A stretch of 64,000 bases of DNA from Vitrella brassicaformis CCMP3155 (lineage: Eukaryota > Protista > Chromerida): contig CDMY01000481.1 of NCBI GenBank assembly GCA_001179505.1, positions 1 through 64,000 of the forward strand. The letters run 5' to 3'. Below are positions 1,624 to 33,899 of this stretch, in pieces. Numbering within the stretch: position 1 is the stretch's first letter; every line of letters starts with the position of its first letter. A program made the translations under genes and the position numbers. The notes under the pieces are model-generated. The model had not been told where the DNA came from, made no database searches, and worked only from the letters and a program-made list of their open reading frames with translations.

Positions 1624-1724
1624 CACCCCCTCAGAAATGCGCCATCAAGTTCAGCCGTTCAGCACCGGCCACCCTCTCACTTCTTCAGCTCCAGCGCTGC
1701 TGCTCTCAGGTTGCCCCGTTTGCA

Positions 1725-2931
1725 ATGTCTGATGCCGCTGCTTCAAGCGACACCAGGCGGCCGGGGAGCTGGCGACGGCGAGGTGCGCGCACAGCAAGAG
1801 GACATGCGTGTCTGCGTCATTGCCATGTTCATGGGGGTGTGTGTGTGTGCAGAGCGGCAGCAATATGAGAGACGAATAGCTGAGCTCGAAGCCGAGAGGG
1901 ATACATACAAACGTGAGCGAGACGCTGCTCTGGAAGAGCTGCGAGAGCTGCGAACACGGCTGGCTCAAGATGATCACAAGACTCTCCGCGAGGTAGCCCA
2001 TCAGGGCCGTCTCTATCGCGGCACTATGGTGGATGACTTGCCTCACGGCTCGGGAGTGCTGTACGCGATGGATGGCGAGACCAAGATCTACGAGGGCGAG
2101 TGGCAAGATGGCACGAGGCATGGCCAGGGAAAGGAGTTCACTGATGACAAGATGACCTACAAGGGTGCGTGGGCAGACGGAGAGAAGGTGGGAGATGGCG
2201 AGGCGACGGGCATGCAGTGGGAACGGTGCTGTAGCTACTACGGGAAGACAATCGACGGCAAACCACACGGCGAGGGGGAGCTGCTACAAGGCGAGAGTGT
2301 CATATACAGAGGCCGGTGGAAAGACGGAAAGCGGAACGGCAAAGGAGATGAGTTCGTTGACGGCCGGCTGATCTACACAGGCACCTGGTTTTGCGGCAAG
2401 CGAACGGGTCGTGGGGCAGAGTTCAGCCAAGGCGGCGAATTGATCTATGAGGGGAGCTGGCACAACGGAGAGAGGACCTACAGACGAGAAGGGAAGGTGG
2501 GCGGCATGGAACTCAAGGGAGATCAGGGGGAGTTGCTGGGCTATTACTCTGGAGCCATATACTATGGGAGACCACACGGCGAGGGAGAGCTGCGAGATGG
2601 TGGCGACAACAGAGTCGTCTACAAGGGCGGATGGAGAAACGGCATGCGGCACGGCCACGGCAAGGCATACTACCACTGGAATGGTCCTGTGTTGTGGTTT
2701 CGTGGCGAATGGCGGCACGACAGAATCCACAGCGGTGCTCTCTTCCCGGACGGCAACTGGAGTGGGGAAAGGGAGCAAGATGGAATGCCGGTGTTTCCGG
2801 CTGACATCACAATGTGGCAGGGGGGAGAAGCGATGACTGATATCAACGTGCCGGGGAGCGGATGGACGGTGGCGGAGCTGTTACGGGATCGCGGTGTGTC
2901 GGTGTATCTTCCTGTCGGTGCACTGGGATAG
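1725..2931 (+). CDS. MORN-repeat protein with N-terminal coiled coil (2 exons: 1725-1782, 1853-2931)
   Basis: Repeated YxGxWxxGxRxGxG motifs (YEGEWQDGTRHGQG, YRGRWKDGKRNGKG, YKGGWRNGMRHGHG); the GT-AG intron 1783-1852 joins ATG 1725 in frame. Confidence 0.9.
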
Positions 2932-11941: not shown

Positions 11942-13694
11942 GTGTTTTGTGTGTATGCAGCCATTGCATTGCGCGATGGGTGACATGCACATACAAAGAG
12001 AGACTAGACGGTTAGTGAGTGAGCTGAGTACCAGCCATCCACACATCCTGGACATACACACAGCATTAACAGCTGCATACAACCCACCCCCTCCCCCCTT
12101 CCACCCAACAACGGCCAGCCATTTTCAGGCTGTCTTTTTCCGCAGTGTGTGAAAAGGAAGACACACAACACCCCACACATTGCCAAATCGTTCACCGACG
12201 AAAACATGCCGACCGACCGACCGACAGACGGACCAACGACCACATGCGACAAGCAGATGAGCGTTTGTATGTACCCACAGCAACAAAGCAATGCCCGAGC
12301 GGACGACACAGCAACAAAAGCATACATCCATCCAGCCATCCATCCACGTGTCTATTTCATCATACACATCATGCCCATACACATATGTGTGTCTGTCAGA
12401 TGCCCACAATCGCACAGACTTTGTGTTCGATGCGCTACATGATAGCCGTCTCATCCGTGACGGACCGACCAGGACTCACTCACTCGTTGGACCCCTGGCT
12501 TCATATAGCCACACAGACGCACGAGTGAGTGAACTACGCAGAGCTGACGCGCAGTTTGGGTGTGAGTAGCCGCACGACTCACCGCACGTGGCCCGCAATG
12601 GGAAGAATCTTGCGAGAGTGAAGATCTGCAAGCTTAGCTCGCAGGAGAGAAATGGGACTTTCTGCAGATCTGCTAATGAGAGGTGCGTTCGCTCATCGTA
12701 TCGCATCAGACGCGTCTGCAGATGATGAGTGTCGTTCCGCATCCGATGATGATTCTTCCGCCCGTCGTCCTTATTGCCCTCTGCTCGTCGCTCGTGGCGT
12801 CTTCGCCCCTTCGGCGTACCCTCCAGGCCGTCAATCAGACGGCCGCATCTCCTCCCCTCCCTCCGGGCTGGCGTGACCCAGGCGGCTGAGGCTCCTGCAA
12901 CTCTCTCGGGTCTTCCGCCAGGCGGATGTAGAGCTCTCGAATGGCGACATGCAGCGAGGCGACAACATTCTTCCCTACACCGAAATGGAGGAGCTCATGC
13001 GGTGTGATTTGTGTCAGGAGGATGCGGCGGCTCTGTTTGCGTGGTCTTACGAGGCTGGATTGGTGGACAATGGCACCGAGTCCACCTTTGAGGACAACCT
13101 GTGCGTCGTGCCGTTCATCACGTGTGTGCGGCTGAGGGAGGCGCTCGCGGACGGCGGTCCGCAGGATGGCTACATCATCAATCTGACAGGGCGACCCGAG
13201 GATATGGACGTATCGGACGTGCCGCAGATCCTGCAGCAGCGGGGGGCGCCTTTGGTGTTTTCGGAGGTGTTTTATCGGCTGCGTCATGTGGTGTGTTTCT
13301 GGGCTGCAATGCTGGCTATGCAGGGGAGCTTGGGCGATGACATCGCCAAAGTGACCTCTCTGCGCGCCTTCTACCTGTTTGAAGTGGTGAGCTGCATTTG
13401 AGACGTGCACTCATCCATTCGCATGCTTGTGTGTATGTTATTTTGCAGGACGGCTTTGAGGGCCCGCTTCCAAGCACTATCGGCGAGCTGCCTTATCTGA
13501 AGGGCCTGTACATTATGAACATGGCTTCAATCAGCAGGCCCATCCCGCCCTCCCTCACGAGCCTGCCGATTGAGTTGGGTGGCTGGAAGTCCATGGAGGT
13601 CCTTGATCTGTACAATAACAACTTCAGCGGCCCCATACCAGCAGAGCTGGGACAACTGTCTAAGCTACGACGACTGAGCCTCGGAAGCAACAGG

Positions 13695-15772
13695 GTAGAT
13701 ACCGACACACACTCATACCGACACATGGACATCAATGACTGAATCCATACATATGATCTCCCTCTCTATGGATGGATGTCTGTGTAGTTGTCGGGTCTCA
13801 TACCAGCAGAGCTGGAACAACTTTCGAAGCTACGACAACTGTACCTCGCAAGAAACAGGGTAGATACCGATACACACTCATACCGACACACACGGACATC
13901 AATGACTGAATCCATACATATGATCTCCCTCTCTATGGATGTCTGTGTAGTTGTCGGGTCCCATACCAACAGAGCTGGGACAATTGTCTAAGCTACGACA
14001 ACTGAGCCTCAGAAACAACAGCGTAGATACCGACGCACACTCATACCGACGCACGGACATCAATGACTGAATCCATATATATGATCTCCCTCTCCATGGA
14101 TGTCTGTGTAGTTGTCGGGTCCCATACCAGCAGAGCTGGGACAACTGTCTAAGCTACGACAACTGAGCCTCGAAAACAACAGCGTAGATATCGACATATG
14201 CTCATACCGACACACGGACATCAATAACTGAATCCAGACATATGATCTCCCTCTCCATGGATGTCTGCGTAGTTGTCGGGTCCCATACCAGTAGAGCTGG
14301 AACAACTGTCTAAGCTACGAGAACTGTACCTCGAAAACAACAGGGTAGATACCGACACACACTCATACCGACACACGGACATCAATAACTAAATCCATAC
14401 ATATGATCTCCCTCTCCATGGATGTCTGTATAGTTGTCGGGTCCCCTGCCGATTGAGTTGGGTGGCTGGAAGTCCATGGAGGTCCTTGGTCTGGGAAATA
14501 ACAACTTTAGCAACCACATACCAGCAGAGCTGGGACAACTGTCTAAGCTACGACGACTGAACCTCAGAAACAACAGCGTAGATACCGACGCACACTCATA
14601 CCGACGCACGGACATCAATGACTGAATCCATATATATGATCTCCCTGTCCATGGATGTCTGTGTAGTTGTCGGGTCCCCTGCCGATTGAGTTGGGTGGCA
14701 GGAAGTTCATGGAGGTCCTTGATCTTGGAAATAACAACTTTAGCGGCCCCATACCAGCAGAGCTGGGACAACTGTCTAAGCTACGACGACTGTACCTCGG
14801 AAGCAACAGGGTAGTACCGACACACACTCATACCGACACACACGGACATCAATGACTGAATCCATACATATGATCTCCCTCTCTATGGATGTCTGTGTAG
14901 TTGTCGGGTCCCCTGCCGATTGAGTTGGGTGGCTGGAAGTCCATGGAGGTCCTTTATTTGACCAGTAACAACTTTAGCGGCCCCATACCAGCAGAGCTGG
15001 GACAACTGTCTAAGCTACGAGAACTGTACCTCGCAAGGAACAGGGTAGATACTGACACACACTCATACCGACACACGGACATCAATGACTGAATCCATAC
15101 ATATGATCTCCCTGTCCATGGATGTCTCTGTAGTTGTCGGGTCCCCTGCCGATTGAGTTGGGTGGCAGGAAGTTCATGGAGGTCTTTGATCTTGGAAATA
15201 ACAACTTTAGCGGCCCCATACCAGCAGAGCTGGGACAACTGTCTAAGCTACGAGAACTGTACCTCGGAAGCAACAGGGTAGATACCGACACACACTCATA
15301 CCGACACACACGGACATCAATGACTGAATCCATATATATGATCTCCCTCTCCATGGATGTCTGTGTAGTTGTCGGTTCCTCTGCCGATTGAGTTGGGTGG
15401 CTGGAAGTTCATGGAGGTCCTTGATCTTGGAAATAATAACTTTAGCGGCCCCATACCAGCAGAGCTGGGACAATTTTCTTAGCTACGACAACTGAGCCTC
15501 GGAAACAACAGGGTAGATACCGACACACACTCATACCGACACACGGACATCAATGACTGAATCCATACATATGATCTCCCTCTCCATGGATGTCTGTGTA
15601 GTTGTCGGGTCCCATACCAGTAGAGCTGGGACAACTGTCTAAGCTACGAGGTCTGTACCTCGCAAGGAATAGGGTAGATACCGACATACACTCATACCGA
15701 CACACGGACATCAATGACTGAATCCATACATATGATCTCCCTCTCCCTCTCCATGGATGGATGTCTATGTAG
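13695..15772 (+). repeat. Tandem array of ten LRR cassette exons plus near-identical introns
   Basis: 72-nt exons 13788-13859, 13951-14022, 14112-14183, 14273-14344, 15602-15673; 144-nt exons 14434-14577, 14667-14810, 14901-15044, 15134-15277, 15369-15512. Each is flanked by ...tag and gtag... and all are phase 0. Confidence 0.95.
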
Positions 15773-15906
15773 CTGTCGGGTCCCCTGCCGATTGAGTTGG
15801 GTGGCTGGAAGTCCATGCAGTATCTTGCTTTGCAAAACAACAACTTCAGCGGCTCCCTAGAGCCGCTCAGCAACCTGACGTCGCTTGTAGAGCTGGTCGT
15901 GTCCAA

Positions 15907-16206
15907 NNNNNNNNNNNNNNNNNNNNNNNNNNNNNNNNNNNNNNNNNNNNNNNNNNNNNNNNNNNNNNNNNNNNNNNNNNNNNNNNNNNNNNNNNNNNNN
16001 NNNNNNNNNNNNNNNNNNNNNNNNNNNNNNNNNNNNNNNNNNNNNNNNNNNNNNNNNNNNNNNNNNNNNNNNNNNNNNNNNNNNNNNNNNNNNNNNNNNN
16101 NNNNNNNNNNNNNNNNNNNNNNNNNNNNNNNNNNNNNNNNNNNNNNNNNNNNNNNNNNNNNNNNNNNNNNNNNNNNNNNNNNNNNNNNNNNNNNNNNNNN
16201 NNNNNN
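15907..16206. other. Assembly gap (300 N)
   Basis: N run. Confidence 1.
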
Positions 16207-17188
16207 GAGTGTACGCGTATGTGCTGTGCTTCTGTGTCATGTCAGTTTGAGGGTTATCTGCCCCTCGGTTCCCACAGTTTCTCGAATCTCACCACCATCG
16301 TAGCCGCCAACATCGGTGCGCACGCAACACACACGCAAACGCTTTTCATGTATGCTTCATCGGTCGTCAGGCTGACTGCCATGCTGGACCGCCCCTCTGG
16401 TGGCCCGGCGTACCCGAACGTTCGTTATCTGGACCTCGACTCCAATCGTCTCAACACGTCCATCAACCTGACGTTGTTCCCCAACCTCCGTCAGGCCGAC
16501 TTTAGTAACAACCGCATCCCGGGATTCATCGGCAACGGATCCATGCCCAAATCGTAAGCGACATACAGAGAGATGAGGATATAGCGACAGGTGTTTGCCT
16601 GTCAGGTTGTGGTACTTGAGTTTGGCGGACAACCTGCTGACTGCCCTGCCGGAGGGCTTCCGCTCCATGCCGAACCTACTGTCGCTGAATCTCGCCAACA
16701 ATCGCATCAGCCAGTGGCCCACATGGGGGTCGACACCACCAGGATTATGCATGGGGGATTTTCTCAGTAAGTTCTTGGAATATACAGGCGAGCAGGCGGT
16801 CGTGTTCTCTCTGTGACGATGCGGTAGGCTTGGATATTGTGAAAGATCATGATCCCCCGCCGGACTGGGGCAGCCTGACCTACTTCGACGTCTCCAACAA
16901 TCCCATCAACACAGACGTGACCGCATTCCTGATGCCCCTCAAATGGCAGAGAAGGTAAAACAATACACAGACGCATTAATACACAGACATGGCATCTGTG
17001 GTCGCTGGAATGCATCTGTCTGATCTCCTCGTGTGCGTCAGTTTGACGGTGCTGGGTGCATCGAACTGCAGTCTTTACGGCCCCATGAATTGCGAGGCTT
17101 TCACGACATTCGAGGTTGCGAAGGTTGCGGGCCTGATGGACCAAGGCATACCGGTAACCACACGCATACACACGCGCACGCGCGCGCG

Positions 17189-17236
<48 letters not shown>

Positions 17237-20200
17237 AGTGCAGAGGACTTTCCTGTGTGCGTGTGTGGTGTGTGCAGGTGACAGCTTCAATCTGGTCGTT
17301 TCCTAACCTCTTTTTTTTGTATCTGAGGGACAATCGCATCACGGCCATCGACACGGGCGGCGTGCAGCTGGAACTCTACCACATCGACTTTTCCAACAAC
17401 TCGCTTGTGAGCGTGGCGAGCGGCGACTGGAGTTTCTTCGACGTCCTGCATGCAAGGTTCACGGAGAACCCAGACTTGAGGCACGACTCGGTCCACCCCA
17501 TACCGATTGAGGTAAGAAAATGGCGGGTTGTATGCGCTGCAGGCGATGGCGGTGTATCATCCTCTGTGTGTGTGTTTGTATGTCTCTCAGAAGTGTCAGG
17601 ATTTGCGTCAGAACTTCAACGAGATGAGCATACCGAGACCACTGGTGCCCGACCCGCAGGGTGGGTAACACAGCACAGCACACGCAGACGTCCACTGCCA
17701 TCGTGATAACGCCTATGCATGCTTGATGCAGGATATTCGGTGCGTACGTTGGACAACGGCGAGGAGCGTTTCGAGTGCACCGAGTTCTGCTCCACATTCA
17801 ACAAAATCGAGGTCAGTGATCAGCCAGCCAGCAAAACAAGCTCGCGTACAGTCATTGTGCTCGGTGTGCGCACAGGTCGACTACACCATCAACTCGGATG
17901 CGCTGTGCCGCTGTCTGCCCGGCTACGAGGGCACGGGGGCCAACTGTACCAAGTGCCCACGGAACACATACTCCAACAGAGATTACGGCACACGAACCTG
18001 CAAACAATACCCCGATGATGCAGGTCAGCAGCATTTGACCGCTTCCGACTATATACACGATTGGATTTAATTGTCCAGGTTCTGCCGAGGGGTCAGCTGC
18101 ATGTTACTGTCGTCTTGGATACGAGAGGGGCGAGGAGCCGTGCGAGCCGTGTACAGAAGGGTCTGTTGGCGTGCAGAAGCGCGGTAACAACGGCAGCCGC
18201 GCCACGTGGATCTGCCAAGACTGTTTGCCGGGATTGAACTGCTCCATTCCCGTCAACTACAATGCGAATGTGCTGCCGGGCTTCTTCCAACTTACTGTCC
18301 AGCTGCAATCTGAGAATTCATCTCACAACGCCGCACGAGAAGTGACAACGTAAGAATGAAAGGCAAGAAAGGCTAGTGCTGAGCAGGCAAGTGAGTGGGA
18401 TTTTGGTGTCTCTTAGATATGGCGCTAGATTGACTCTGTTGCCGATAGTGGTACCGTGTCCATTGCGGTCGGCCTGCATAGGCACCAACAAGACGAATGG
18501 ACTCAATATATGCTCGGTAAGAGCCAATTGCATCATTGTGAGAGCCGCCATTTTTATATTCTTGCCTTGTCTGCGTTTCAGGAAGGGCATGAGGGTTTTG
18601 CATGCAACCGGTGCAAGGCGGCTTTCTCGCGTCAGACGCCCCTGCAGCCGTGCACCCCATGTGCCCGACTGTGGCAGATTGTGATAGTCAACGTGTTGCT
18701 TGTGGTCGCCATTCTGATGGCCATCTTCTTACTCACCGCGCTCGCGGAAAGGTCAGCACGCAGCCATGTACCTATCACGGAGGCCCGCTAATCGATCGAC
18801 CCCCGTGCTGTCTGGGTGTGTGTCTGAGTACAGAGCGGCGGCATCCTCCCGCGCTGAGGTCCCCTCTCAGCTGATCAAAATTGGACTCTCACATATTACC
18901 GCTGTAAGCGAAGACAGACACAGACTACGGACTCGCGTTCCTTCTGTTACTTTTCTGCTGTCGGTGTGAGTGCAGGTGTGTGGTCTGCCTTTCTCGTGTT
19001 CGACGAGTCCCTAGGGGGCGACCAGATATCCTCACTTGTCGGTCCCTTCTTCGGATGGAGTGGCGGCGTGCCTGAGTCGTATCAGGTGTGGGAGTGTCTG
19101 CTGAGGGATTCCTTGGGCGACAAATGCGTGTTGTATCGGCATGCTATCTGGCTGGCGCTACCACTTGTCTGGCTCACCATTGTGCCCCTCATTGGTAACC
19201 ACACAGACATTCTAGAGGCCGATGATTTGTGGTCATTTCTGGCTCGTGTCATGGCTGCAGCGAGCGGGTTTGATCGAGTGCGTGATGCCTGCAAGTCAAG
19301 CTGGCGCATTGGCACCGACGAGTCGAGCTCAAAGCCTCCATCCGTAACCACTGGCAAAGCAGACACAGCCGCCGCACACGGCCCTCACCAGCGATCGGTC
19401 ACATTCCAGGAGGCCTCACGAACCGAGCCCGTGACACCACCCTCCTGCCAGCCTTCTTTGGCGAAGCCCCGCAAGAGCGGCCGACGGCGGCAGTGGCTCG
19501 ACAGCCGGGGCACCATGATGGTCGTAATCCTCACGTTCATCCATCCCACCGTGACCAAGAGCATGCTGGCCCTCCTGCGCTGTCGATGGTATCCCTATGT
19601 GGACGATGTCATACCTATCGCCTGAGAAGAGAGTGTCAGTCTGCTGCCCACTGACCCGATGGATGACATGCGGCCCCGAATGGACCTCGATTCTCATGTC
19701 GTCTGCCGATCGGCCGAACACGTCCCGTTCCTGTGGATTGCCGTGGCTGGTCTATTGCTGTGGACATTCGCGCCTGTGGTATGTGGCGTGGCGTTTCTGT
19801 GGCGGCATAGAGAGGGCCTGCAGGACTATCACACTCGAAGGCGAGTGGGCTTCCTCTATATGGGCTATCGCAAGAACTTCTACTGTTGGGACGCTGTCCT
19901 TGCCATGAGGCGTGTATTGGTTCTGGTGATCGCACAACTGGCAACTGGGCAGCCCCGCGGACAGCTGCTTGGCTGGACGGTCGTCGCCGCTGTGTGTCTG
20001 GCGCTGCAACTCACCGTGTGGCCGTTCGATCGAGGCAGCATGGACATCCTCAATGTGACGGAGATGCGTGGATTGATGGTGTGGCTCATGTCGCTGTTCA
20101 TCATGCGCTTTGTTGTTATGCTATTCGAGAGGATTTCTCGGGAGCTGACGATCGGCCTTGTGCTCGTGGTCATAATTGCCAACTTGGTGCACTACATCAT

Positions 20201-20654
20201 CCTGGCGGCGCAGATATGTCGGTATGGTCTGCTGCAAGTGGGCTACAGATACACGGCACTCACCGACTACAATAAGGCTCTCGGTGGGCAATATGGACGA
20301 GCACAGAACTATCATTCACTGTTCCATCTGCCCGCGTGTGGCCTCTCATATTGTTGCAACTCGCGTGATGTCTGGTTGGGTGACGGGGCCTCTTTTGTCG
20401 TGGCTCATTCGCAGAGAGGAGGACAGACGGCGAGTCGCACCCAAAGTCTTCTATGACTGGTCCAGTGCGGCCCTCTCTGCCGACGGCCCCCTTGCTGCAT
20501 CAAGGCGGTGCCATCCGTTTGTCCGCCGTCCGGTGCATCGTGTGGTGACGGCCATGGAGCTGACGTCAGCCGCCGTGAGGGAAGCTATCGAGGCACTCAA
20601 ACTCACACACGTGCCCGGCGACTTGTAAGCACACACACGCCCCCCCCCCCCCCC

Positions 20655-27677: not shown

Positions 27678-27961
27678 GCCCCAGTCTGCGAGCTAAGCGA
27701 GCTGGTTTTCGCTTCGAAGGTCGGCTTTCGTGGTTCAGCCCCAGTTTTCGACCACCAACACGCTTGCCTTGTACTTACTGTACGCAGAGCTGACGCGCAG
27801 TGTGGGTGTGAGTGGACTCACCGCACGTGGCCTGCAATGGGAAAAATCCGAGGCAACCGAAGATCTGCAAGCTTAGCTCGCAGGAGAGAAAATGGGACTT
27901 TGTGCAGATCTGCTGATGAGAGGTGCGTTCGCTCATCGTATCGCATCAGACGCGTCTGCAG

Positions 27962-30900
27962 ATGATGAGTGTCGTTCCGCATCCGATCATGATTCTTCCG
28001 CCCGTCGTCCTTATTGCCCTCTGCTCGTCGCTCGTGGCGTCTTCGCCCCTCTGGCGAATCCTCCAGCCCACCAATGAGACGGATCCATCGCCTCCCCTCC
28101 CTCCGGGCTGGCGTGACTCCAGGCGGCTGAGGCTCCTGCAACGCTCTCGCGTCTTCCGTTCCGCCGATGTGGTGTCCCCGGACACCGATGAAATGCTGTA
28201 CGGTGACAACATCCTCCCCTATACCGAGATGGAGGAGCTCGTGCGGTGTGATGCTTGTCAGGAGGATGCGGCGGCTCTGTTCGATTGGTCTTATGAGGCT
28301 GGTTTGGTGGACAACGAGACAAAGTCCGTCTTTGAGGACAACCTATGCGTCGTGTCCTTCATCACGTGTGTGCGGCTGAGTGAGGCGCTGGCGGACGGCG
28401 GACCGCGGGAGGGCTACATCATCACTCTGACAGGGTGGCCCGAGGATATGGAGATATCGGATGTGCCGCTGATCCTGCAGCAGCGAGGCTGGAAACCTTT
28501 CGTCTTTTCGGATGTGTTCTATAGGCTCCGTCACGTGATTTGCTTCTCAGCCTATCAGCTGCCTATGCAGGGAAGCTTGGGCGATGAGATCGCCAAAGTG
28601 ACCTCTCTTCGTGCCATCTTCCTGGCAAAAATGGTGGGTTGCATTCAATGCACACATTCATTCACACACATGCTCGTGCGTATGCCTTTTTGCAGGACGG
28701 TATGAAGGGGCCCCTTCCAGCTACAATTGGCGAGCTGCCTTATCTGAAGGGGCTGTACCTCTGGAGCATGAATTCAACAACCGGCCCCATCCCGCCCTCC
28801 CTCATCAACCTCTCTCGCCTCGAGGCTCTCACTCTCACGAACACAGACCTCTCAGGGCCCATCCCTGAACACATCGGCAGACTTCGGCGCCTTCGCGTTC
28901 TGGAGATTTGGGGAAACAATCGGATGGAGGGGCCCTTCCCGGCCAGTGTGACATCTTGCCGCAACCTGACCCGAATAAGGCTCGAGAGCATCGGACTCAC
29001 TGGCCCTCTACCTGGCGATCTGGGTACCCTGTCCCGCTTGGATGATTTGTGGCTGGCGAACAATTCGCTGAGTGGGGAGCTGCCCCGGTCACTGGTGCAG
29101 CTGAGACGGTTGCGAGCACTCGATCTGTCCAACAACAGTTTCAGTGGCCCGTTGCCGGACGGGCTGGGGAGCAAAATGAGCAGCCTATAAATTCTAGATA
29201 TGTCGCTCAACAATGTAAGAGACTGTTGCGCGGGTACATACAGACACACGGACATCAATGACTGAATCCATACATATAATCTCCCTCTCCATGGATGTCT
29301 GTCTGTGTAGTTGTCGGGTCCTCTGCCGATTGAGTTGGGTGGCTGGAAGTCCATGGACTTCCTTGGTCTGGGAAATAACAAGTTTACCGGCCCCATACCA
29401 GCAGAGCTGGGACAACTGTCTAAGCTACGAGGACTGTACCTCGGGAACAACAGGGTAGATACCGACGCACACTCATACCGACAGACGGACATCAACGACT
29501 GAATCCATGCATATGATCTCCCTCTCCATGTCTGTCTAGTTGTCGGGTCCCGTGCCGATTGAGTTGGGTGGCTGGAAGTCCATGGAGTATCTTGATCTGA
29601 CAAATAGCAACTTCAGCGGCTCCCTAGAGCCGCTACGTCACCTCACGTTGATGAAGCATCTATTTTTGCGAAACAACAACTTCAGCGGCTCCCTCGAGCC
29701 GCTCAGCAACCTGACGACGCCGCTTATAGACCTGGACGTGTCCAACAACTCGGTGAGCTAAAGGGGGGGAAGGCGATGGGATCGGCAAATCTGTGTGTGA
29801 GTGTGCATGTGTGTGCTGTGCTTTCGTGTCATGTCAGTTTGAGGGTTACCTGCCCCTCGGTTCCCACAGTTTCTCGAATCTCACCATCATCGCAGCAGCC
29901 AACAATCGGTGCACACACAACACCCACGCAAACACTTTTCATATATGCTGCATCGGTCGTCAGACTGACTGCCATGTTGGACCGCCCCTCTGATGGCCCG
30001 GCGTACCCGAACGTTCGTTATCTGTACCTCGACTCCAATCGTCTCAACACGTCCATCGACCTGACGTTGTTCCCCAACCTCGAGCAGGCCGACTTCGGGA
30101 ACAACCGCATCCCGGGTTTCATCGGCAACGGATCCATGCCCAAATCGTAAGCGACATATAGAGAGATGAGGACATAGCGACACAGGTGTTTGCCTGTCAG
30201 GTTGATTTGGTTGAGTTTGGCGGACAACCTGCTGACTGCCCTGCCCGAGGGCTTCCGCTCCATGCCGAATCTACTGTCGCTGAATCTCGCCAACAATCGC
30301 ATCAGCCAGTGGCCCACATGGGGGTCGACACCGCCAGGCTTATGCAGCTGGGGGGAACTCAGTAAGCTCCTGACATCATACCCAGGCGGGCAAGTGGTCG
30401 TTTTCTCTGTGTGACGATACGGTAGGCTCGCATATTGTGAAGGATCATGACCCCCCCCCCGACTGGGGCAGCCTAATCTACTTCCACGTCTCCAACAATC
30501 CCATCAACACAGACGTGACCGCATTCCTAATGCCCCTCAAATGGCAGAAAAGGTAAGAAAATACACACACGCATGAACACACATACATGACATGGAATGT
30601 AACTGTCTGATCTCTTCGTGTGTGGTAGTTTGATGGAGCTGGATGCATCGAACTGCAGCCTTTACGGCCCCATGAGTTGCGAGGCCTTTACCGCATTCGA
30701 CTTTATGGACCGACACTCATTGGTAACCACACACACGCATCACACGCACACACACACATGCAGAGGATTCTATCTGTGTGCGTGTGTGGTGTGTGCAGGT
30801 GACACCTTCAATCTGGTCGTTTCCTAGCTTGGTTTTTTGTCTCTGAGGGACAATCGCATCACGGCCATCGACACGGGCGACGTGCAGCTGGAACTGTACC

Positions 30901-33899
30901 ACGTCGACTTTTCCAACAACTCGCTTGTGAGCGTGGCGAGCGGCGACTGGAGTTTCTTCGACGTCCTGCATGCAAGGTTCACGGAGAACCCAGACTTGAG
31001 GCACGACTCGGTAGACCCCATGCCGATTGAGGTGAGAAAAAGGCGGGTTGTGTGCGCTGGAGGGGGTGGCGATGTATCATCCTCTGTGTGTGTGTGTGTT
31101 TGTATGTCTATCAGAAGTGTCAGGATTTGCGTCAGAACTTCAACGAGATGAGCATACCGAGACCACTGGTGCCCGATCCACAGGGTGGGTAACACAGCAC
31201 AGCACACGCAGACATCCACTGCCATCGTGATGACGCCTATGCATGCTTGATGCAGGATATTCGGTGCGTACGTTGGACAACGGCGAGGAGCGTTTCGAGT
31301 GCACCGAGTTCTGCTCCCTCTTCAGCAGACTTGAGGTCAGGTGACATAGAGTCAAATACACAGCACGAGTACACGTGCTCACTGTACTCGCTGTGCTTGC
31401 TACCGTGCGCTGCTCACACAGGTCGACTATACCTTCAACTCGGATGCCCTGTGTCGGTGCCTTTCCGGCTACGAGGGCATCGGCACCAACTGCACCAAGT
31501 GCCCGCCTAACACACACAGCAACAGACAAATCGGCACACGAACATGCGAACAATGTCCCGATGATGCAGGTCACCAGTGAAGCGACCACAACGCGAGACA
31601 GCCCTTCTCAGTATATACGTGTGTGTCTGCAGGTTCTGACGAGGGCTCAGCTGCATGCTATTGCCGTCTTGGCCACCAGCGTGGCGATGACCCGTGCGAG
31701 CTGTGTACAGAGGGGTCTGTTGGCGTGCAGAAGCGCGGTAACAACGGCAGCCGCGCCACGTTGACCTGCCGGGACTGTCTGCCGGGATTGGACTGCTCCA
31801 TTCCCGTCAACTACAATGCGAATGTGCTGCCGGGCTTCTTCCAACTTACTGTCCAGCTGCAATCTGAGAATTCATCTCACAACGCCACACGAGAAGTGAC
31901 GACGTAAGAACGAAAGGCAAGAAAGGCGAGTGCTGAGCAGGCAAGTGAGTGGGATTTTGGTGTCTCTTAGATATGGCGCTAGATTGACTCTGTTGCCGAT
32001 AGTGGTACCGTGTCCATTGCGGTCGGCCTGCTTAGGCACCAACAAGACGAATGGACTCAACATATGCTCGGTAAGAGCCAATTGCATCATTGTGACAGCC
32101 GCCATCTTTATATTCTTGCCTTGTCTGCGTGTCAGGAAGGGCATGAGGGATTCGTGTGCAACCGGTGCAAGGCGAGTTTCTCGCGGCAGACGCCCCCTTG
32201 GCCCTGCAAACCATGTGCCGCACTGTGGCGGATTCTCCTGGTCAATGTGATTTTCGTTGTCGCAACTCTGATTGCCGTCTTCGTCCTCACAGCACTCGCG
32301 GAAAGGTTAGCACTCATGTATGTGTCTATCGCACAAACGCGTCCATTCGCATCTGTGCCTGTGTTGTGTGTTCAGGGCTGCTTCCTCCCCCCGTGCTGAA
32401 GTGCCGTCGCAATTAATAAAAATTGGGCTCTACCACATCACAGCCGTACGTGAAGGAATGGACAGGCACATGCGCTCACCTTTCATCACAACCTCTTTGC
32501 TGTGACGGTGTGTGTGCAGGTGTGTGGTCTGGCCTTTGTCGTGTTCGACGACTCCCCCTGGGGCGACCCAGATATCGTCGCTGATTGGGTCGTTCTTTGC
32601 GTGGGACGGCGGGGTGCCTGAGTCGTATCAGGTGTGGGAGTGTCTGCTGAGGCGCTATGTGGGCGAGAGATGCGTGCTCTATCGACATGCTTTGTGGCTG
32701 GGGCTGCCGCTCGTCTGGCTTACCGTTGTGCCACTCATTGGTGAGGACACACAGTCTGGAAGGAGGTGCTTTGTGGTCATTTTGCCCCGGTTCATGACTG
32801 CAGCAAGTGCGTTTGACACAGTGCGTGGTGCATTTAAGTTGAGACGGCGCAGGAGCAGCGACCGTTCGACCTCATGTGCCACTGACACCTATCTGCGAGC
32901 CCCCTCAGCGCCCCCAGCCTTGAGCAGTAGCAGGGCAGAGCAGCCTAGCGCACATGACCCTCACCAGCGACCGGTCAGCTTCCAGAATTCACAAACGGAA
33001 TCGATGGCATCGCCGTCATGTCAACACACCTCAGCAGAGCACCGCAAGTGGTGTAGATGGCGGCATTGGCTTGGCAACAGGAGCAGTATGATGGTCGTCA
33101 TCATCTTGTTCATATATCCCACGGTGATTAGGAGCATGCTGGCCCTACTGCGCTGCCGGCCCTACAGGGGCCCTATGTGGACCCTGTCATCCCTGTCCCG
33201 CCAGGCGAGAGCGTCGGTCTGCTCCCCAGCGACCCGGCGGATAACCCGCGGCCGAGAATGGACCTCGACTCGAAAGTCATTTGCTGGTCTGCCGAGCATG
33301 CGCCCTTCATGTGGATAGCCGCGGCTGGTCTGCTCGTGTGGACGTTTGGCGCAGTCGTGTGTGGCGTGGTCTATTTGTGGTGGCACAGAGATGGCCTGCA
33401 GGAGCAGCAAACGCGCAGACGGGTGGGCTTCCTCTATGTGGGCTATCGAAAGCCGTTCTTCTACTAGGATGCCGTGCTGGCCATGAGGCGTGTATTGGTG
33501 CTGCTGATTGCACAGCAGGCGACAGCGCAGCCCCGCCAACAGCTGCTTAGCTGGACGGCGGTCGCCTGTGTGTGCCTGGCGCTGCAATTCGCCGTGTGGC
33601 CGTTCGACCGCGCCAATATGGACATTCTGAATCGCACGGAGCTTCGGGGGTTGCTGGTGTGGCTGATGTCGTTATTTGCTATCCATTTTCTAGTCGTGTT
33701 GGCGGACGGGGGCTCTTCCATCCTGACGATCGTGTTGGTTCTGGTGGTGATTACTGCCAATCTGGCGCATTACGTCACAGCTGTGGCAGAGGTATGTCGC
33801 TTTCGGCTGCTGCAGATGAGTTACAGATGCACGGCCGTCTCCGACCGCATGCAATCTCATCCCAAAAACAACTCAAATCGTCACTCCCGCCGCTTTTGA
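27962..33899 (+). pseudogene. LRR / Cys-rich / multi-pass membrane receptor-like gene, copy 2 (disabled, C-terminally truncated)
   Basis: Collinear with copy 1 in exons and introns from ~27783; TAA 29188-29190, frameshifts at ~30835 (T run) and ~33168 (G run), TAG 33465-33467; only one 144-nt cassette (29311-29454). Confidence 0.9.

What the first reader, a model, noticed from the sequence alone, without database searches (positions are those of the whole stretch)
13695..15772. Hypervariable LRR cassette-exon array: candidate combinatorial receptor-diversification system
There are ten symmetric phase-0 exons, each exactly one (72 nt) or two (144 nt) LRRs, so any subset splices in frame. Backbones are almost invariant, but exposed beta-strand positions vary in mosaic combinations (RQLYLARN, RQLSLRNN, RQLSLENN, RELYLENN, RRLNLRNN, RRLYLGSN, RELYLARN, RELYLGSN, RGLYLARN; first repeats VLDLYN, VLGLGN, VLYLTS, VFDLGN). 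This mirrors LRR exon shuffling in brown-algal ROCO proteins and is conceptually like lamprey VLR cassettes, but here it is on a multi-TM receptor in a probable chromerid. Exon structure and variation are seen; recognition/immune function is inference.
Basis: partly seen in the sequence, partly recalled or inferred. Interest (0 to 1): 0.9.

Follow-up and report, generated by a model that had tools for sequence, protein, structure and literature searches.

The report
Expanded LRR exon array, Vitrella receptor
One member of a family of surface-receptor genes in the alga Vitrella has lengthened its ligand-binding leucine-rich-repeat domain by repeatedly duplicating small exon-plus-intron units. 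The copies differ mainly at the predicted ligand-contact residues, but there is no evidence that the cell mixes them by splicing, and this copy looks broken in the reference assembly.

Summary
There are ten phase-0 exons (five of 72 nt, five of 144 nt) separated by eleven near-identical 89-99 nt GT..AG introns.

- **Variation:** it concentrates at four β-strand codons. Their diversity is 0.28, against 0.065 in the introns and 0.05 in framework codons. Combinations are mosaic.
- **RNA:** contigs confirm the exact splice sites and show E0-E4 joined in series.
E9 carries an in-frame TAG, and the array abuts an N gap. As assembled, this gene (c1) has about five further disabling lesions, and its tandem neighbour c2 also has several.
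- **Organism and family:** the genome is Vitrella brassicaformis. The gene belongs to a family with an LRR ectodomain, Cys-rich repeats and a CRMP-like multi-pass membrane core.
- **Relatives:** intact paralogs have the same phase-0 LRR exons. Close paralogs carry 1 (c2) and 3 (c3) cassettes with the same intron family.

Best reading: a young array built by unequal crossing-over and gene conversion, shaped by diversifying selection, in a birth-and-death receptor family. It is the alveolate counterpart of brown-algal ROCO LRR exon shuffling. Combinatorial splicing and VLR-like assembly are not supported. Two RNA features disagree with the assembled second half of the array. First readers of this scan noted a similar array elsewhere in this genome (s1-205637).

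The parts
12724..13386 (+). Exon 1 of gene copy c1: signal peptide and a Cys-containing N-terminal cap. It has a 1-nt deletion near 12878 relative to c2, which stops the signal-peptide ORF at a TGA at 12887-12889.
   Evidence: alignment with copy 2; ORFs
13449..13694 (+). Exon E0: first LRRs, ending in an A-type plus B-type LRR pair that is the first member of the repeat family.
   Evidence: Pfam LRR_4/LRR_8/LRR_1 hits; spliced to E1 in RNA contigs
13695..15772 (+). The array: introns I0-I10 (89-99 nt, GT..AG) alternating with cassette exons E1-E4 and E10 (72 nt, one B-type LRR) and E5-E9 (144 nt, A-type plus B-type LRR).
15369..15512 (+). Cassette E9, with an in-frame TAG at 15480-15482 and changes at framework residues (G3V, L->F). 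Six of its seven private differences are changes to T. No read-derived contig lies on 15388-15474.
15773..15906 (+). Exon E11: an A-type LRR followed by the FSGSLEPLSNL.. LRR. It is cut by the N gap at 15907-16206.
   Evidence: RNA covers 15836-15906 but not 15802-15835
16246..20630 (+). Remaining exons of c1: further LRRs, Cys-rich (Ephrin_rec_like/EGF-like) repeats and a multi-pass membrane core. Lesions: a 1-nt deletion in exon 16246-16315, a 1-nt deletion near 18988, a TGA at 19624-19626, and a lost acceptor (AG to AA) near 20358.
27781..33860 (+). Tandem paralog c2 (annotated as P0160). It has one 144-nt cassette (about 29312-29455) flanked by the same intron family. It carries a TAA near 29188, a TAG at 33466-33468 and several frameshifts.

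Best explanation
The stretch is a young tandem array of exon-plus-intron units, 161 bp for one LRR and 233 bp for two. It sits inside one member (c1) of a Vitrella brassicaformis family of surface receptors. These receptors have a signal peptide, a plant-type LRR ectodomain, Cys-rich repeats and a CRMP-like multi-pass membrane core.

In this family the LRRs lie on phase-0 exons of one or two repeats, so duplicating a unit never breaks the frame. Shown or strongly indicated: unequal crossing-over between the near-identical introns, including one two-unit 467-bp step, multiplied an ancestral B/A LRR module. The result is 10 cassettes in c1, 1 in c2 and 3 in c3.

Inferred: gene conversion or recombination reshuffled short tracts among units and between loci. 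Diversifying selection fixed amino-acid changes at the beta-strand positions that face the ligand, while indels were kept out of the exons. Shown for E0-E4: the exons are spliced in series, giving a longer solenoid with a new binding surface rather than a menu of alternatives. As assembled, c1, c2 and c3 all carry frame-breaking lesions. The locus therefore looks like recently disabled members of a birth-and-death receptor family, unless those lesions are assembly errors among close paralogs.
For: Anatomy.

Selection: the five exposed codons (16, 17, 19, 21, 22, of which 16 does not vary) have pi 0.284 and pN 0.359 against pS 0.043. Framework codons have pi 0.048 and introns 0.065. Permutation p is about 1e-5. 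Codons 17, 19, 21 and 22 show at least 10 non-synonymous changes where 2.8 are expected at the intron rate, Poisson p 6e-4.

Mosaicism: 73 of 190 informative site pairs fail the four-gamete test. Intron distance and adjacent-exon distance are uncorrelated (rho -0.17).

Frame constraint: there are no indels in about 1.1 kb of cassette exon, against 4-6 indel events in about 1 kb of intron.

History: the E6 and E8 units differ at 6 of 235 positions, and W-S and R-F types alternate, which fits a two-unit duplication. Array neutral divergence (0.065) is below c1-c2 divergence (introns 0.117, dS 0.22). Omega of 0.30 in the non-array exons shows long constraint.

Family: intact paralogs keep the same intron positions, with exons of 144+72+165 nt in P0158 and 150+141+72 nt in P0156. 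c3 has three cassettes with the same introns, and c1-c3 intron distance falls as low as 0.022.

RNA: GT..AG joints lie exactly at I0-I3, and one contig spans E0-E1-E2.

Structure: the AF2 model of the c2 ectodomain is an LRR solenoid (pLDDT 77.5) with a strand over positions 17-19.

Membrane core: it hits Plasmodium CRMP2 and piroplasm/coccidian relatives.
Against: Copy number and order in the second half of the array are unverified, because short-read contigs break at every unit. Two RNA runs hold an E7-end to E3-type-start junction that the assembly lacks. The expressed terminal exon differs from the assembled one at 15802-15835. c1 as assembled cannot make the receptor, so selection on this very copy is inferred from its past. 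The dN/dS figures rest on few sites and non-independent pairs, and recombination violates tree-based reasoning. Hypervariability could have been partly imported from paralogs by conversion rather than arising in place. Logan contigs drop rare variants, so skipped isoforms could exist unseen.
Confidence: 0.6

Rival explanations
1. Regulated cassette splicing. In an intact allele or paralog, the symmetric cassettes are included in varying subsets, as in brown-algal ROCO genes or Dscam, so that one gene yields a repertoire of receptor isoforms.
For: All cassettes are phase 0 with near-identical splice sites. The public model of c3 (P0159) joins the upstream exon straight to the terminal exon and skips all three cassettes. 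In the RNA run X6, no contig lies on I4-E6 at the 98% threshold, or on I7-I10, while E0-E4, E7 and part of E11 are covered. An ambiguous joint links the E7 end to an A-type exon start. Alternative splicing of LRR exons is reported for Ectocarpus ROCO genes (PMC11378527).
Against: For E0-E4, only serial junctions were listed, and one contig carries E0-E1-E2. The 89-nt introns favour intron definition, and unspliced pieces are what is seen beside the spliced ones. There is no selector/docking-type structure (intron fold z = -0.28). The ambiguous joint reaches only about 28 nt into the next exon and equally fits plain E7-E8 splicing (depth arithmetic). The c3 model may be an ORF-saving choice by the gene predictor, because its third cassette is frameshifted.
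Confidence: 0.1
2. Assembly artefact. The array, or its second half and the lesions, is a chimeric or collapsed short-read assembly of several near-identical paralogs or alleles, so the cassette number, order and the E9 stop are not real.
For: A 300-N gap abuts the array. c1, c2 and c3 share units with introns as little as 2% apart. The RNA junction from the E7 end to an E3-type start, and an expressed terminal-exon variant, are absent from all three assembled loci. No contig from three DNA runs lies on 15388-15474. Six of seven private E9 changes are to T. DNA runs hold a W-F type A-LRR with a normal framework.
Against: Contigs from independent DNA runs match many unit-specific stretches with no differences, for example 13745-13901, 14137-14229 and 15002-15083. 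cDNA confirms the order E0-E1-E2-E3-E4. Unit-specific variants are consistent across exon-intron borders. Other family members assemble into intact 1.3-1.9 kb ORFs.
Confidence: 0.2
3. Neutral minisatellite-like expansion inside an already dead gene. The hypervariable pattern would be inherited from, or copied in from, functional paralogs and not selected in this array.
For: c1 carries about six ORF or splice lesions, and c2 and c3 are damaged too. There is inter-locus similarity of units and frequent four-gamete failures.
Against: The lesion density of the gene body is compatible with roughly 1% neutral divergence (my own estimate), far younger than the 6.5% divergence among units. All 22 splice sites are intact and no cassette exon has an indel, whereas the introns have 4-6 indel events. 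Known paralogs offer too few cassettes (1 and 3) to be the source of 11 different exposed-residue combinations.
Confidence: 0.1

Closest known systems
LRR exon shuffling in brown-algal ROCO (and type I LRR) genes (Zambounis et al. 2012, PMC3341825; Teng et al. 2024, PMC11378527)
   Same: One 24-residue LRR per 72-nt frame-neutral exon. Tandem gain and loss of such exons. Positive selection on concave-face residues. 'Inactivated exons' with stops. A candidate recognition role.
   Different: The lineage is different (an alveolate rather than a stramenopile). The exon register is shifted by two residues (the exon starts at L-S-G here and at G in Ectocarpus), so the origin is independent. Here the LRRs are extracellular on a multi-pass CRMP-like receptor, not on a cytosolic ROC-COR GTPase. 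Here the intron is duplicated with the exon and stays 93% identical. There are single- and double-LRR units. No reversed or intronic orphan LRR exons were seen. Alternative splicing is not shown.
Apicomplexan cysteine repeat modular proteins (CRMPs; PMC9815656, PMC9670195)
   Same: The multi-pass membrane core of c1 matches Plasmodium CRMP2 and piroplasm/coccidian relatives. Cys-rich Ephrin-receptor-like/EGF-like repeats precede it. PMC9815656 states that Chromera velia has many diverse CRMPs.
   Different: CRMP ectodomains carry Kringle, lectin and similar modules, not plant-type LRR arrays. The Vitrella family is a large paralogous expansion. No link to rhoptry discharge can be inferred for a free-living alga.
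Plant LRR receptor-like proteins/kinases and R-gene LRRs under diversifying selection
   Same: The 24-residue plant-specific LRR consensus (LxxLxLxxNxLSGxIPxxLGxL). Hypervariable xxLxLxx residues. Unequal crossing-over and gene conversion. Birth-and-death evolution with pseudogenes.
   Different: Plant LRR ectodomains are mostly encoded on one large exon. Here every one or two repeats is an exon, and the signalling part is a multi-pass membrane module rather than a kinase.
Lamprey VLR and insect Dscam diversification
   Same: Both involve only the idea of many interchangeable cassettes for a binding surface.
   Different: VLR cassettes lie outside an incomplete gene and are copied in somatically. 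Dscam exons are mutually exclusive and use docking/selector RNA pairing. Here the cassettes are ordinary exons, joined in series in cDNA, with structurally unremarkable introns.

Membership tests
Brown-algal-type LRR exon-shuffling arrays | Each LRR (24 aa) on its own 72-nt exon, with neighbouring exons frame-neutral | tested here: met
   Five 72-nt and five 144-nt phase-0 exons. The same design occurs in intact paralogs.
Brown-algal-type LRR exon-shuffling arrays | Copy-number change of LRR exons between close paralogs | tested here: met
   10 cassettes in c1, 1 in c2 and 3 in c3. P0158 has 2 and P0156 has 1 homologous B-type LRRs.
Brown-algal-type LRR exon-shuffling arrays | Excess non-synonymous change at concave-face residues | tested here: met
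   pN 0.359 against pS 0.043 at exposed codons, with intron pi 0.065; p about 1e-5 and 6e-4. No likelihood site model was run.
Brown-algal-type LRR exon-shuffling arrays | ROC-COR GTPase (ROCO) or kinase partner domain | tested here: not met
   The downstream part is Cys-rich repeats plus a multi-TM core, with no ROC/COR or kinase hit.
Brown-algal-type LRR exon-shuffling arrays | Alternative inclusion of LRR exons in transcripts | tested here: inconclusive
   Only serial junctions were found for E0-E4. The second half has ambiguous or non-colinear joints. Assembled contigs drop rare isoforms.
CRMP (cysteine repeat modular protein) family | Conserved core: multi-pass transmembrane region homologous to that of CRMPs | tested here: met
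   phmmer with window:19659-20456 hits P0064, the cluster of Plasmodium CRMP2 (E 1.8e-9), as well as Babesia, Theileria, Eimeria and Cardiosporidium relatives. There is a weak PF06011 hit.
CRMP (cysteine repeat modular protein) family | EGF-like/Ephrin-receptor-like Cys repeats directly before the TM core | tested here: inconclusive
   PF07699, EGF_3 and TNFR-like hits fall below the gathering score on 17723-18070. Paralogs are named EGF-like or ephrin-receptor-like by UniRef.
CRMP (cysteine repeat modular protein) family | Nine TM helices; role in triggering rhoptry exocytosis | not testable with these tools
   About 8-9 hydrophobic segments were read by eye in the translation. No TM predictor was available and there are no functional data.
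Plant-specific (24-residue) LRR class | Consensus LxxLxLxxNxLSGxIPxxLGxLxx in tandem, forming a solenoid | tested here: met
   Translations. Pfam LRR_1/LRR_4/LRR_8 hits. AF2 solenoid model with pLDDT 77.5.
VLR-type somatic cassette assembly | Incomplete germline gene with flanking, non-spliced donor cassettes copied in somatically | tested here: not met
   The cassettes lie inside the gene, each with GT..AG borders, and are joined by splicing in cDNA.
Dscam-type mutually exclusive exon clusters | Only one exon of a cluster per mRNA; docking/selector intron pairing | tested here: not met
   One cDNA contig holds E0, E1 and E2 together. The intron fold is no better than shuffled sequence (z -0.28). 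No inverted repeats were found.

The most novel reading that the evidence does not exclude
An intact allele or paralog of this array is used at the RNA level to generate receptor diversity. It would do so by variable cassette inclusion, or by non-colinear joining. The E7-donor to E3-type-acceptor junction, seen in two independent RNA runs, would then be exon repetition, back-splicing or trans-splicing rather than an unassembled unit. This would give a free-living relative of apicomplexans a combinatorial repertoire on the CRMP sensor chassis.
Probability: 0.07. Interest if true: 0.85.

Novelty: new variant of a known kind. Interest (0 to 1): 0.45.

Why it matters
Apicomplexan parasites use CRMPs as surface sensors that trigger invasion. 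This locus shows that in their free-living relative Vitrella, the same membrane chassis carries plant-type LRR ectodomains. These ectodomains evolve by exon-unit duplication, conversion and diversifying selection, the mode known from plant resistance genes and brown-algal ROCO genes. That points to an arms-race-like or highly variable ligand for these receptors. It also gives a third, independent example of the 'one LRR per frame-neutral exon' architecture as a route to rapid receptor change. The specific locus is probably a recent casualty of that turnover, so its value is evolutionary rather than functional.

Tried and rejected
- **Metagenome scans:** scans for the intron core and for the conserved exon core found nothing.
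- **Rfam:** no RNA family on the array.
- **Intron structure:** no significant intron fold and no inverted repeats, so a selector/docking or MITE-like hairpin idea was dropped.
- **Stop-codon reassignment:** rejected as the explanation for the in-frame stops. TAG replaces a Lys codon in E9 and a Trp codon in c2, and TGA replaces a Ser codon. These are unrelated sense codons, each one substitution away, and they occur alongside 1-nt deletions.
- **Small rescuing introns:** none with GT..AG and the right phase could be found for the exon-1 frameshift or the TGA at 19624.
- **c1's own public protein model:** not found in either length window searched.
- **Solved structures:** PDB sequence search with the TM core gave nothing useful.
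- **Exhausted tools:** The lesions, the E9 stop and the odd junctions therefore could not be checked against reads.
Full report
**1. The observation**

The stretch 13695-15772 is a tandem array. Tandem Repeats Finder reports periods of 161, 233 and 467 bp at 89-92% identity.

Splitting at the recurring AG|TTGTCGG and AACAG[G/C]|GTAG borders gives ten exons: E1-E4 and E10 of 72 nt, and E5-E9 of 144 nt. It also gives eleven introns of 89-99 nt, all GT..AG and all in phase 0.

Each 72-nt unit encodes one 24-residue plant-type LRR, which I call B-type (LSGPIPAELGQLSKLRxLxLxxNx). Each 144-nt exon adds an A-type LRR in front of it (LSGPLPIELGGWKSMEVLxLxNNN).

The upstream exon (13449-13694) already ends in an A+B pair. 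The downstream exon (from 15773) starts with an A-type LRR. The repeat family is therefore 11 B-type plus 7 A-type repeats. The intron core occurs 13 times in the window, where none is expected by chance. Eleven copies are in the array and two are in a neighbouring paralog.

- E9 has an in-frame TAG at 15480-15482.
- The array ends against a 300-N gap at 15907-16206.
- Other lesions exist in the gene (section 5).

**2. Where the variation sits**

The introns are more alike than the exons: 93.5% mean pairwise identity against 85-86%.

In the B-type LRRs, nucleotide diversity differs sharply by site class:

| Site class | Diversity (pi) |
|---|---|
| Five beta-strand 'x' codons (16, 17, 19, 21, 22 in the exon register) | 0.284 |
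| Other codons | 0.048 |
| Introns | 0.065 |

- At the exposed codons, pN is 0.359 against pS 0.043. In the framework, pN is 0.041 against pS 0.068.
- A random draw of 15 columns reaches the observed diversity in about 1 of 100,000 trials.
- Counting only distinct states, codons 17, 19, 21 and 22 need at least 10 non-synonymous changes. At the intron rate 2.8 are expected (Poisson p 6e-4).
- An AlphaFold model of the c2 ectodomain (P0160:190-470, pLDDT 77.5) is an LRR solenoid with a beta-strand over positions 17-19 of the B-type repeat. This agrees with the textbook placement of the xxLxLxx residues on the concave face.

The combinations are mosaic:
- 73 of 190 pairs of informative sites fail the four-gamete test.
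- The distance between two introns does not predict the distance between their adjoining exons (rho -0.17). For example, I9 and I10 differ at 2 sites while their exons differ at 13.

The cassette exons have no indel in about 1.1 kb. The introns have 4-6 indel events in about 1 kb. The units therefore diverged under selection for an open frame, with excess change at the predicted ligand face and with recombination or conversion among units.

**3. How the array grew**

- The E6 and E8 units differ at 6 of 235 positions.
- The A-type repeats alternate W-S / R-F / W-S / R-F, which explains the 467-bp period. At least one step duplicated two units at once.
- A tandem paralog, c2, lies at about 27781-33860 and is 77-88% identical over the aligned blocks. 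It has a single 144-nt cassette flanked by the same intron family.
- Neutral divergence inside the array (0.065) is lower than between c1 and c2 (introns 0.117, dS 0.22). The expansion is therefore younger than the gene duplication, or it is being homogenised.

**4. Organism and gene family**

A phmmer search of 1.8 billion representatives with the membrane-core ORF (19659-20456) gave best hits at 78-79% identity. Their genes lie on contigs of GCA_001179505.1, named Vitrella brassicaformis CCMP3155 by the sources.

More distant hits include the cluster of Plasmodium 'cysteine repeat modular protein 2', as well as Babesia, Theileria, Eimeria and Cardiosporidium relatives. Pfam gives a weak PF06011 hit on the core and weak Ephrin_rec_like/EGF hits on the Cys-rich exons. 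The ESM Atlas neighbours carry the same families. PMC9815656 states that Chromera has many diverse CRMPs.

At least seven intact-looking Vitrella paralogs of 1278-1910 aa share the body at about 75-91% identity but have very different LRR ectodomains.

Mapping three of the models onto their loci shows the same phase-0 intron positions:
- P0158 has exons of 144, 72 and 165 nt, including a single-LRR 72-nt exon homologous to the B cassette.
- P0156 has exons of 150, 141 and 72 nt.

The design of one or two LRRs per frame-neutral exon is therefore ancestral in the family. c1 is its extreme expansion.

A third close paralog, c3 (L003, protein model P0159), carries three cassettes of 144, 72 and 142 nt with the same introns. 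The 142-nt cassette is frameshifted. Some c3 introns are only 2% from c1 introns. The c2 and c3 cassettes add further states at the hypervariable positions: L and K at position 17, and D at positions 19 and 22.

**5. Integrity of the gene**

Measured against c2 and the intact paralogs, c1 as assembled has these lesions:
- a 1-nt deletion in exon 1 that ends the signal-peptide ORF after 55 codons;
- the TAG in E9;
- a 1-nt deletion in exon 16246-16315;
- a 1-nt deletion near 18988 that destroys the conserved VCGLAFLVF segment;
- a TGA at 19624-19626 where paralogs have Ser;
- an AG-to-AA change at the acceptor of the intron that paralog P0003 splices out.

c2 has a TAA, a TAG replacing Trp, and several frameshifts. 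Its public model (P0160) avoids the TAA with an artificial intron and stops early. c3 is split into two gene models, and its third cassette is frameshifted.

Yet c1 and c2 differ with omega 0.30 over 545 codons. They were constrained for most of their history. By my own rough estimate, the lesion density of the gene body corresponds to about 1% neutral divergence, far younger than the array.

One caveat applies. Six of the seven private changes in E9 are changes to T. No contig from three DNA runs or the RNA run lies on 15388-15474. The DNA runs do hold a W-F type A-LRR with a normal framework. The E9 stop, and possibly other lesions in this trio of close paralogs, may therefore be assembly errors.

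**6. RNA evidence**

Only assembled contigs of public runs were available. One run (X6) holds spliced contigs with GT..AG joints exactly at I0, I1, I2 and I3. One 186-nt contig runs E0-E1-E2 with no mismatch. The same run also holds unspliced pieces over I2, I3 and I6.

The cassettes are therefore real exons, transcribed from c1 or an identical allele, and the first five units are joined in series. No skipped junction was listed for them.

The second half does not fit the assembly:
- X6 has no cover on I4-E6 at the 98% threshold, or on I7-I10.
- A high-depth joint from the E7 end reaches only about 28 nt into an A-type exon, so it is compatible with plain E7-E8 splicing.
- X21 (80 nt, no mismatch) and X6 both join the E7 end to an E3-type exon start. 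That order is absent from c1, c2 and c3.
- The expressed terminal exon reads ..VLDLYNNN before an exact match to 15836-15906, whereas the assembled 15802-15835 has no RNA cover.

Possible causes are an unassembled or collapsed unit, a fourth locus or allele, or non-colinear splicing.

**7. Interpretation**

The best-supported reading is evolutionary. A frame-neutral LRR exon architecture allowed unequal crossing-over between near-identical introns to lengthen the solenoid. Conversion shuffled short tracts, and diversifying selection acted on the ligand face, in a receptor family that turns over by birth and death.

This is the same phenomenon as LRR exon shuffling in brown-algal ROCO genes, which show 72-nt exons, positive selection on the concave face and inactivated exons (PMC3341825), and alternative splicing (PMC11378527). 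It arose independently here: the exon register is shifted by two residues, the lineage is different, and the partner domains are different.

The proposals I do not accept:
- A VLR-like mechanism is excluded by the anatomy.
- A Dscam-like mutually exclusive mechanism is excluded by the E0-E1-E2 contig and by the lack of intron structure.
- Regulated cassette skipping remains possible but has no positive evidence.

**8. Novelty and score**

Diverse CRMPs in chromerids are known, and LRR exon shuffling under selection is known. My searches found no paper describing their combination, an LRR exon array on a CRMP-like receptor in an alveolate. First readers of this scan have flagged the receptor family repeatedly, and they noted a similar exon array elsewhere in this genome. 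I rate it a new variant of a known kind, of moderate interest. The rating is lowered by the probable pseudogene state and by the unverified second half of the array.

Noticed in passing
window 15004-15044 joined to 14111-14150 (RNA runs X21, X6): A cDNA contig joins the 3' end of E7 to an E3-type exon start with no mismatch. This order is absent from c1, c2 and c3. It could be an unassembled unit, another locus, back- or trans-splicing, or template switching.
   Followed up: partly
window 15802-15906: The expressed terminal exon reads ..CTTGATCTGTAC before an exact match to 15836-15906 and runs 56 nt into the N gap. The assembled first LRR of E11 (15802-15835) has no RNA cover.
   Followed up: partly
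window 15376-15480: Six of seven private differences in E9 are changes to T, including the TAG. No contig from any of four runs lies on 15388-15474. This may be an assembly artefact.
   Followed up: partly
L003 4247-5115 (CDMY01000669.1): A third paralog, c3, has three cassettes (144, 72 and a frameshifted 142 nt) with the same intron family. The public protein model P0159 skips all three.
   Followed up: yes
L001 18090-18708: A near-identical copy (99-100% at protein level) of the last two exons of the P0003 receptor gene lies 2.2 kb downstream of it. It is a gene-fragment duplication in the same family.
   Followed up: no
protein P0155 (1910 aa): An intact family member contains an internal duplication of a multi-exon block (B-type LRR, A-type LRR, FSGTLEPLS.., FEGY..). 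Block duplication is therefore recurrent in the family.
   Followed up: no
window 12652-12723 and 27893-27953: Both c1 and c2 have a conserved out-of-frame upstream ATG (MGLSADLLMRG..) about 70 nt before the signal-peptide ATG. It may be a uORF.
   Followed up: no
window 16316-16370: In c1, the short intron after exon 16246-16315 reads through in frame without a stop. This would mask the 1-nt deletion if the intron were retained.
   Followed up: no
runs X11-X16: Marine sediment metagenome runs hold 6-22% of the sampled 31-mers of 12900-15900. Near-identical Vitrella-like DNA therefore occurs in environmental samples and could show natural cassette variation.
   Followed up: no
window 1711-2931: A long ORF with MORN repeats (Pfam E 2e-17). 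This is an unrelated neighbouring gene.
   Followed up: no
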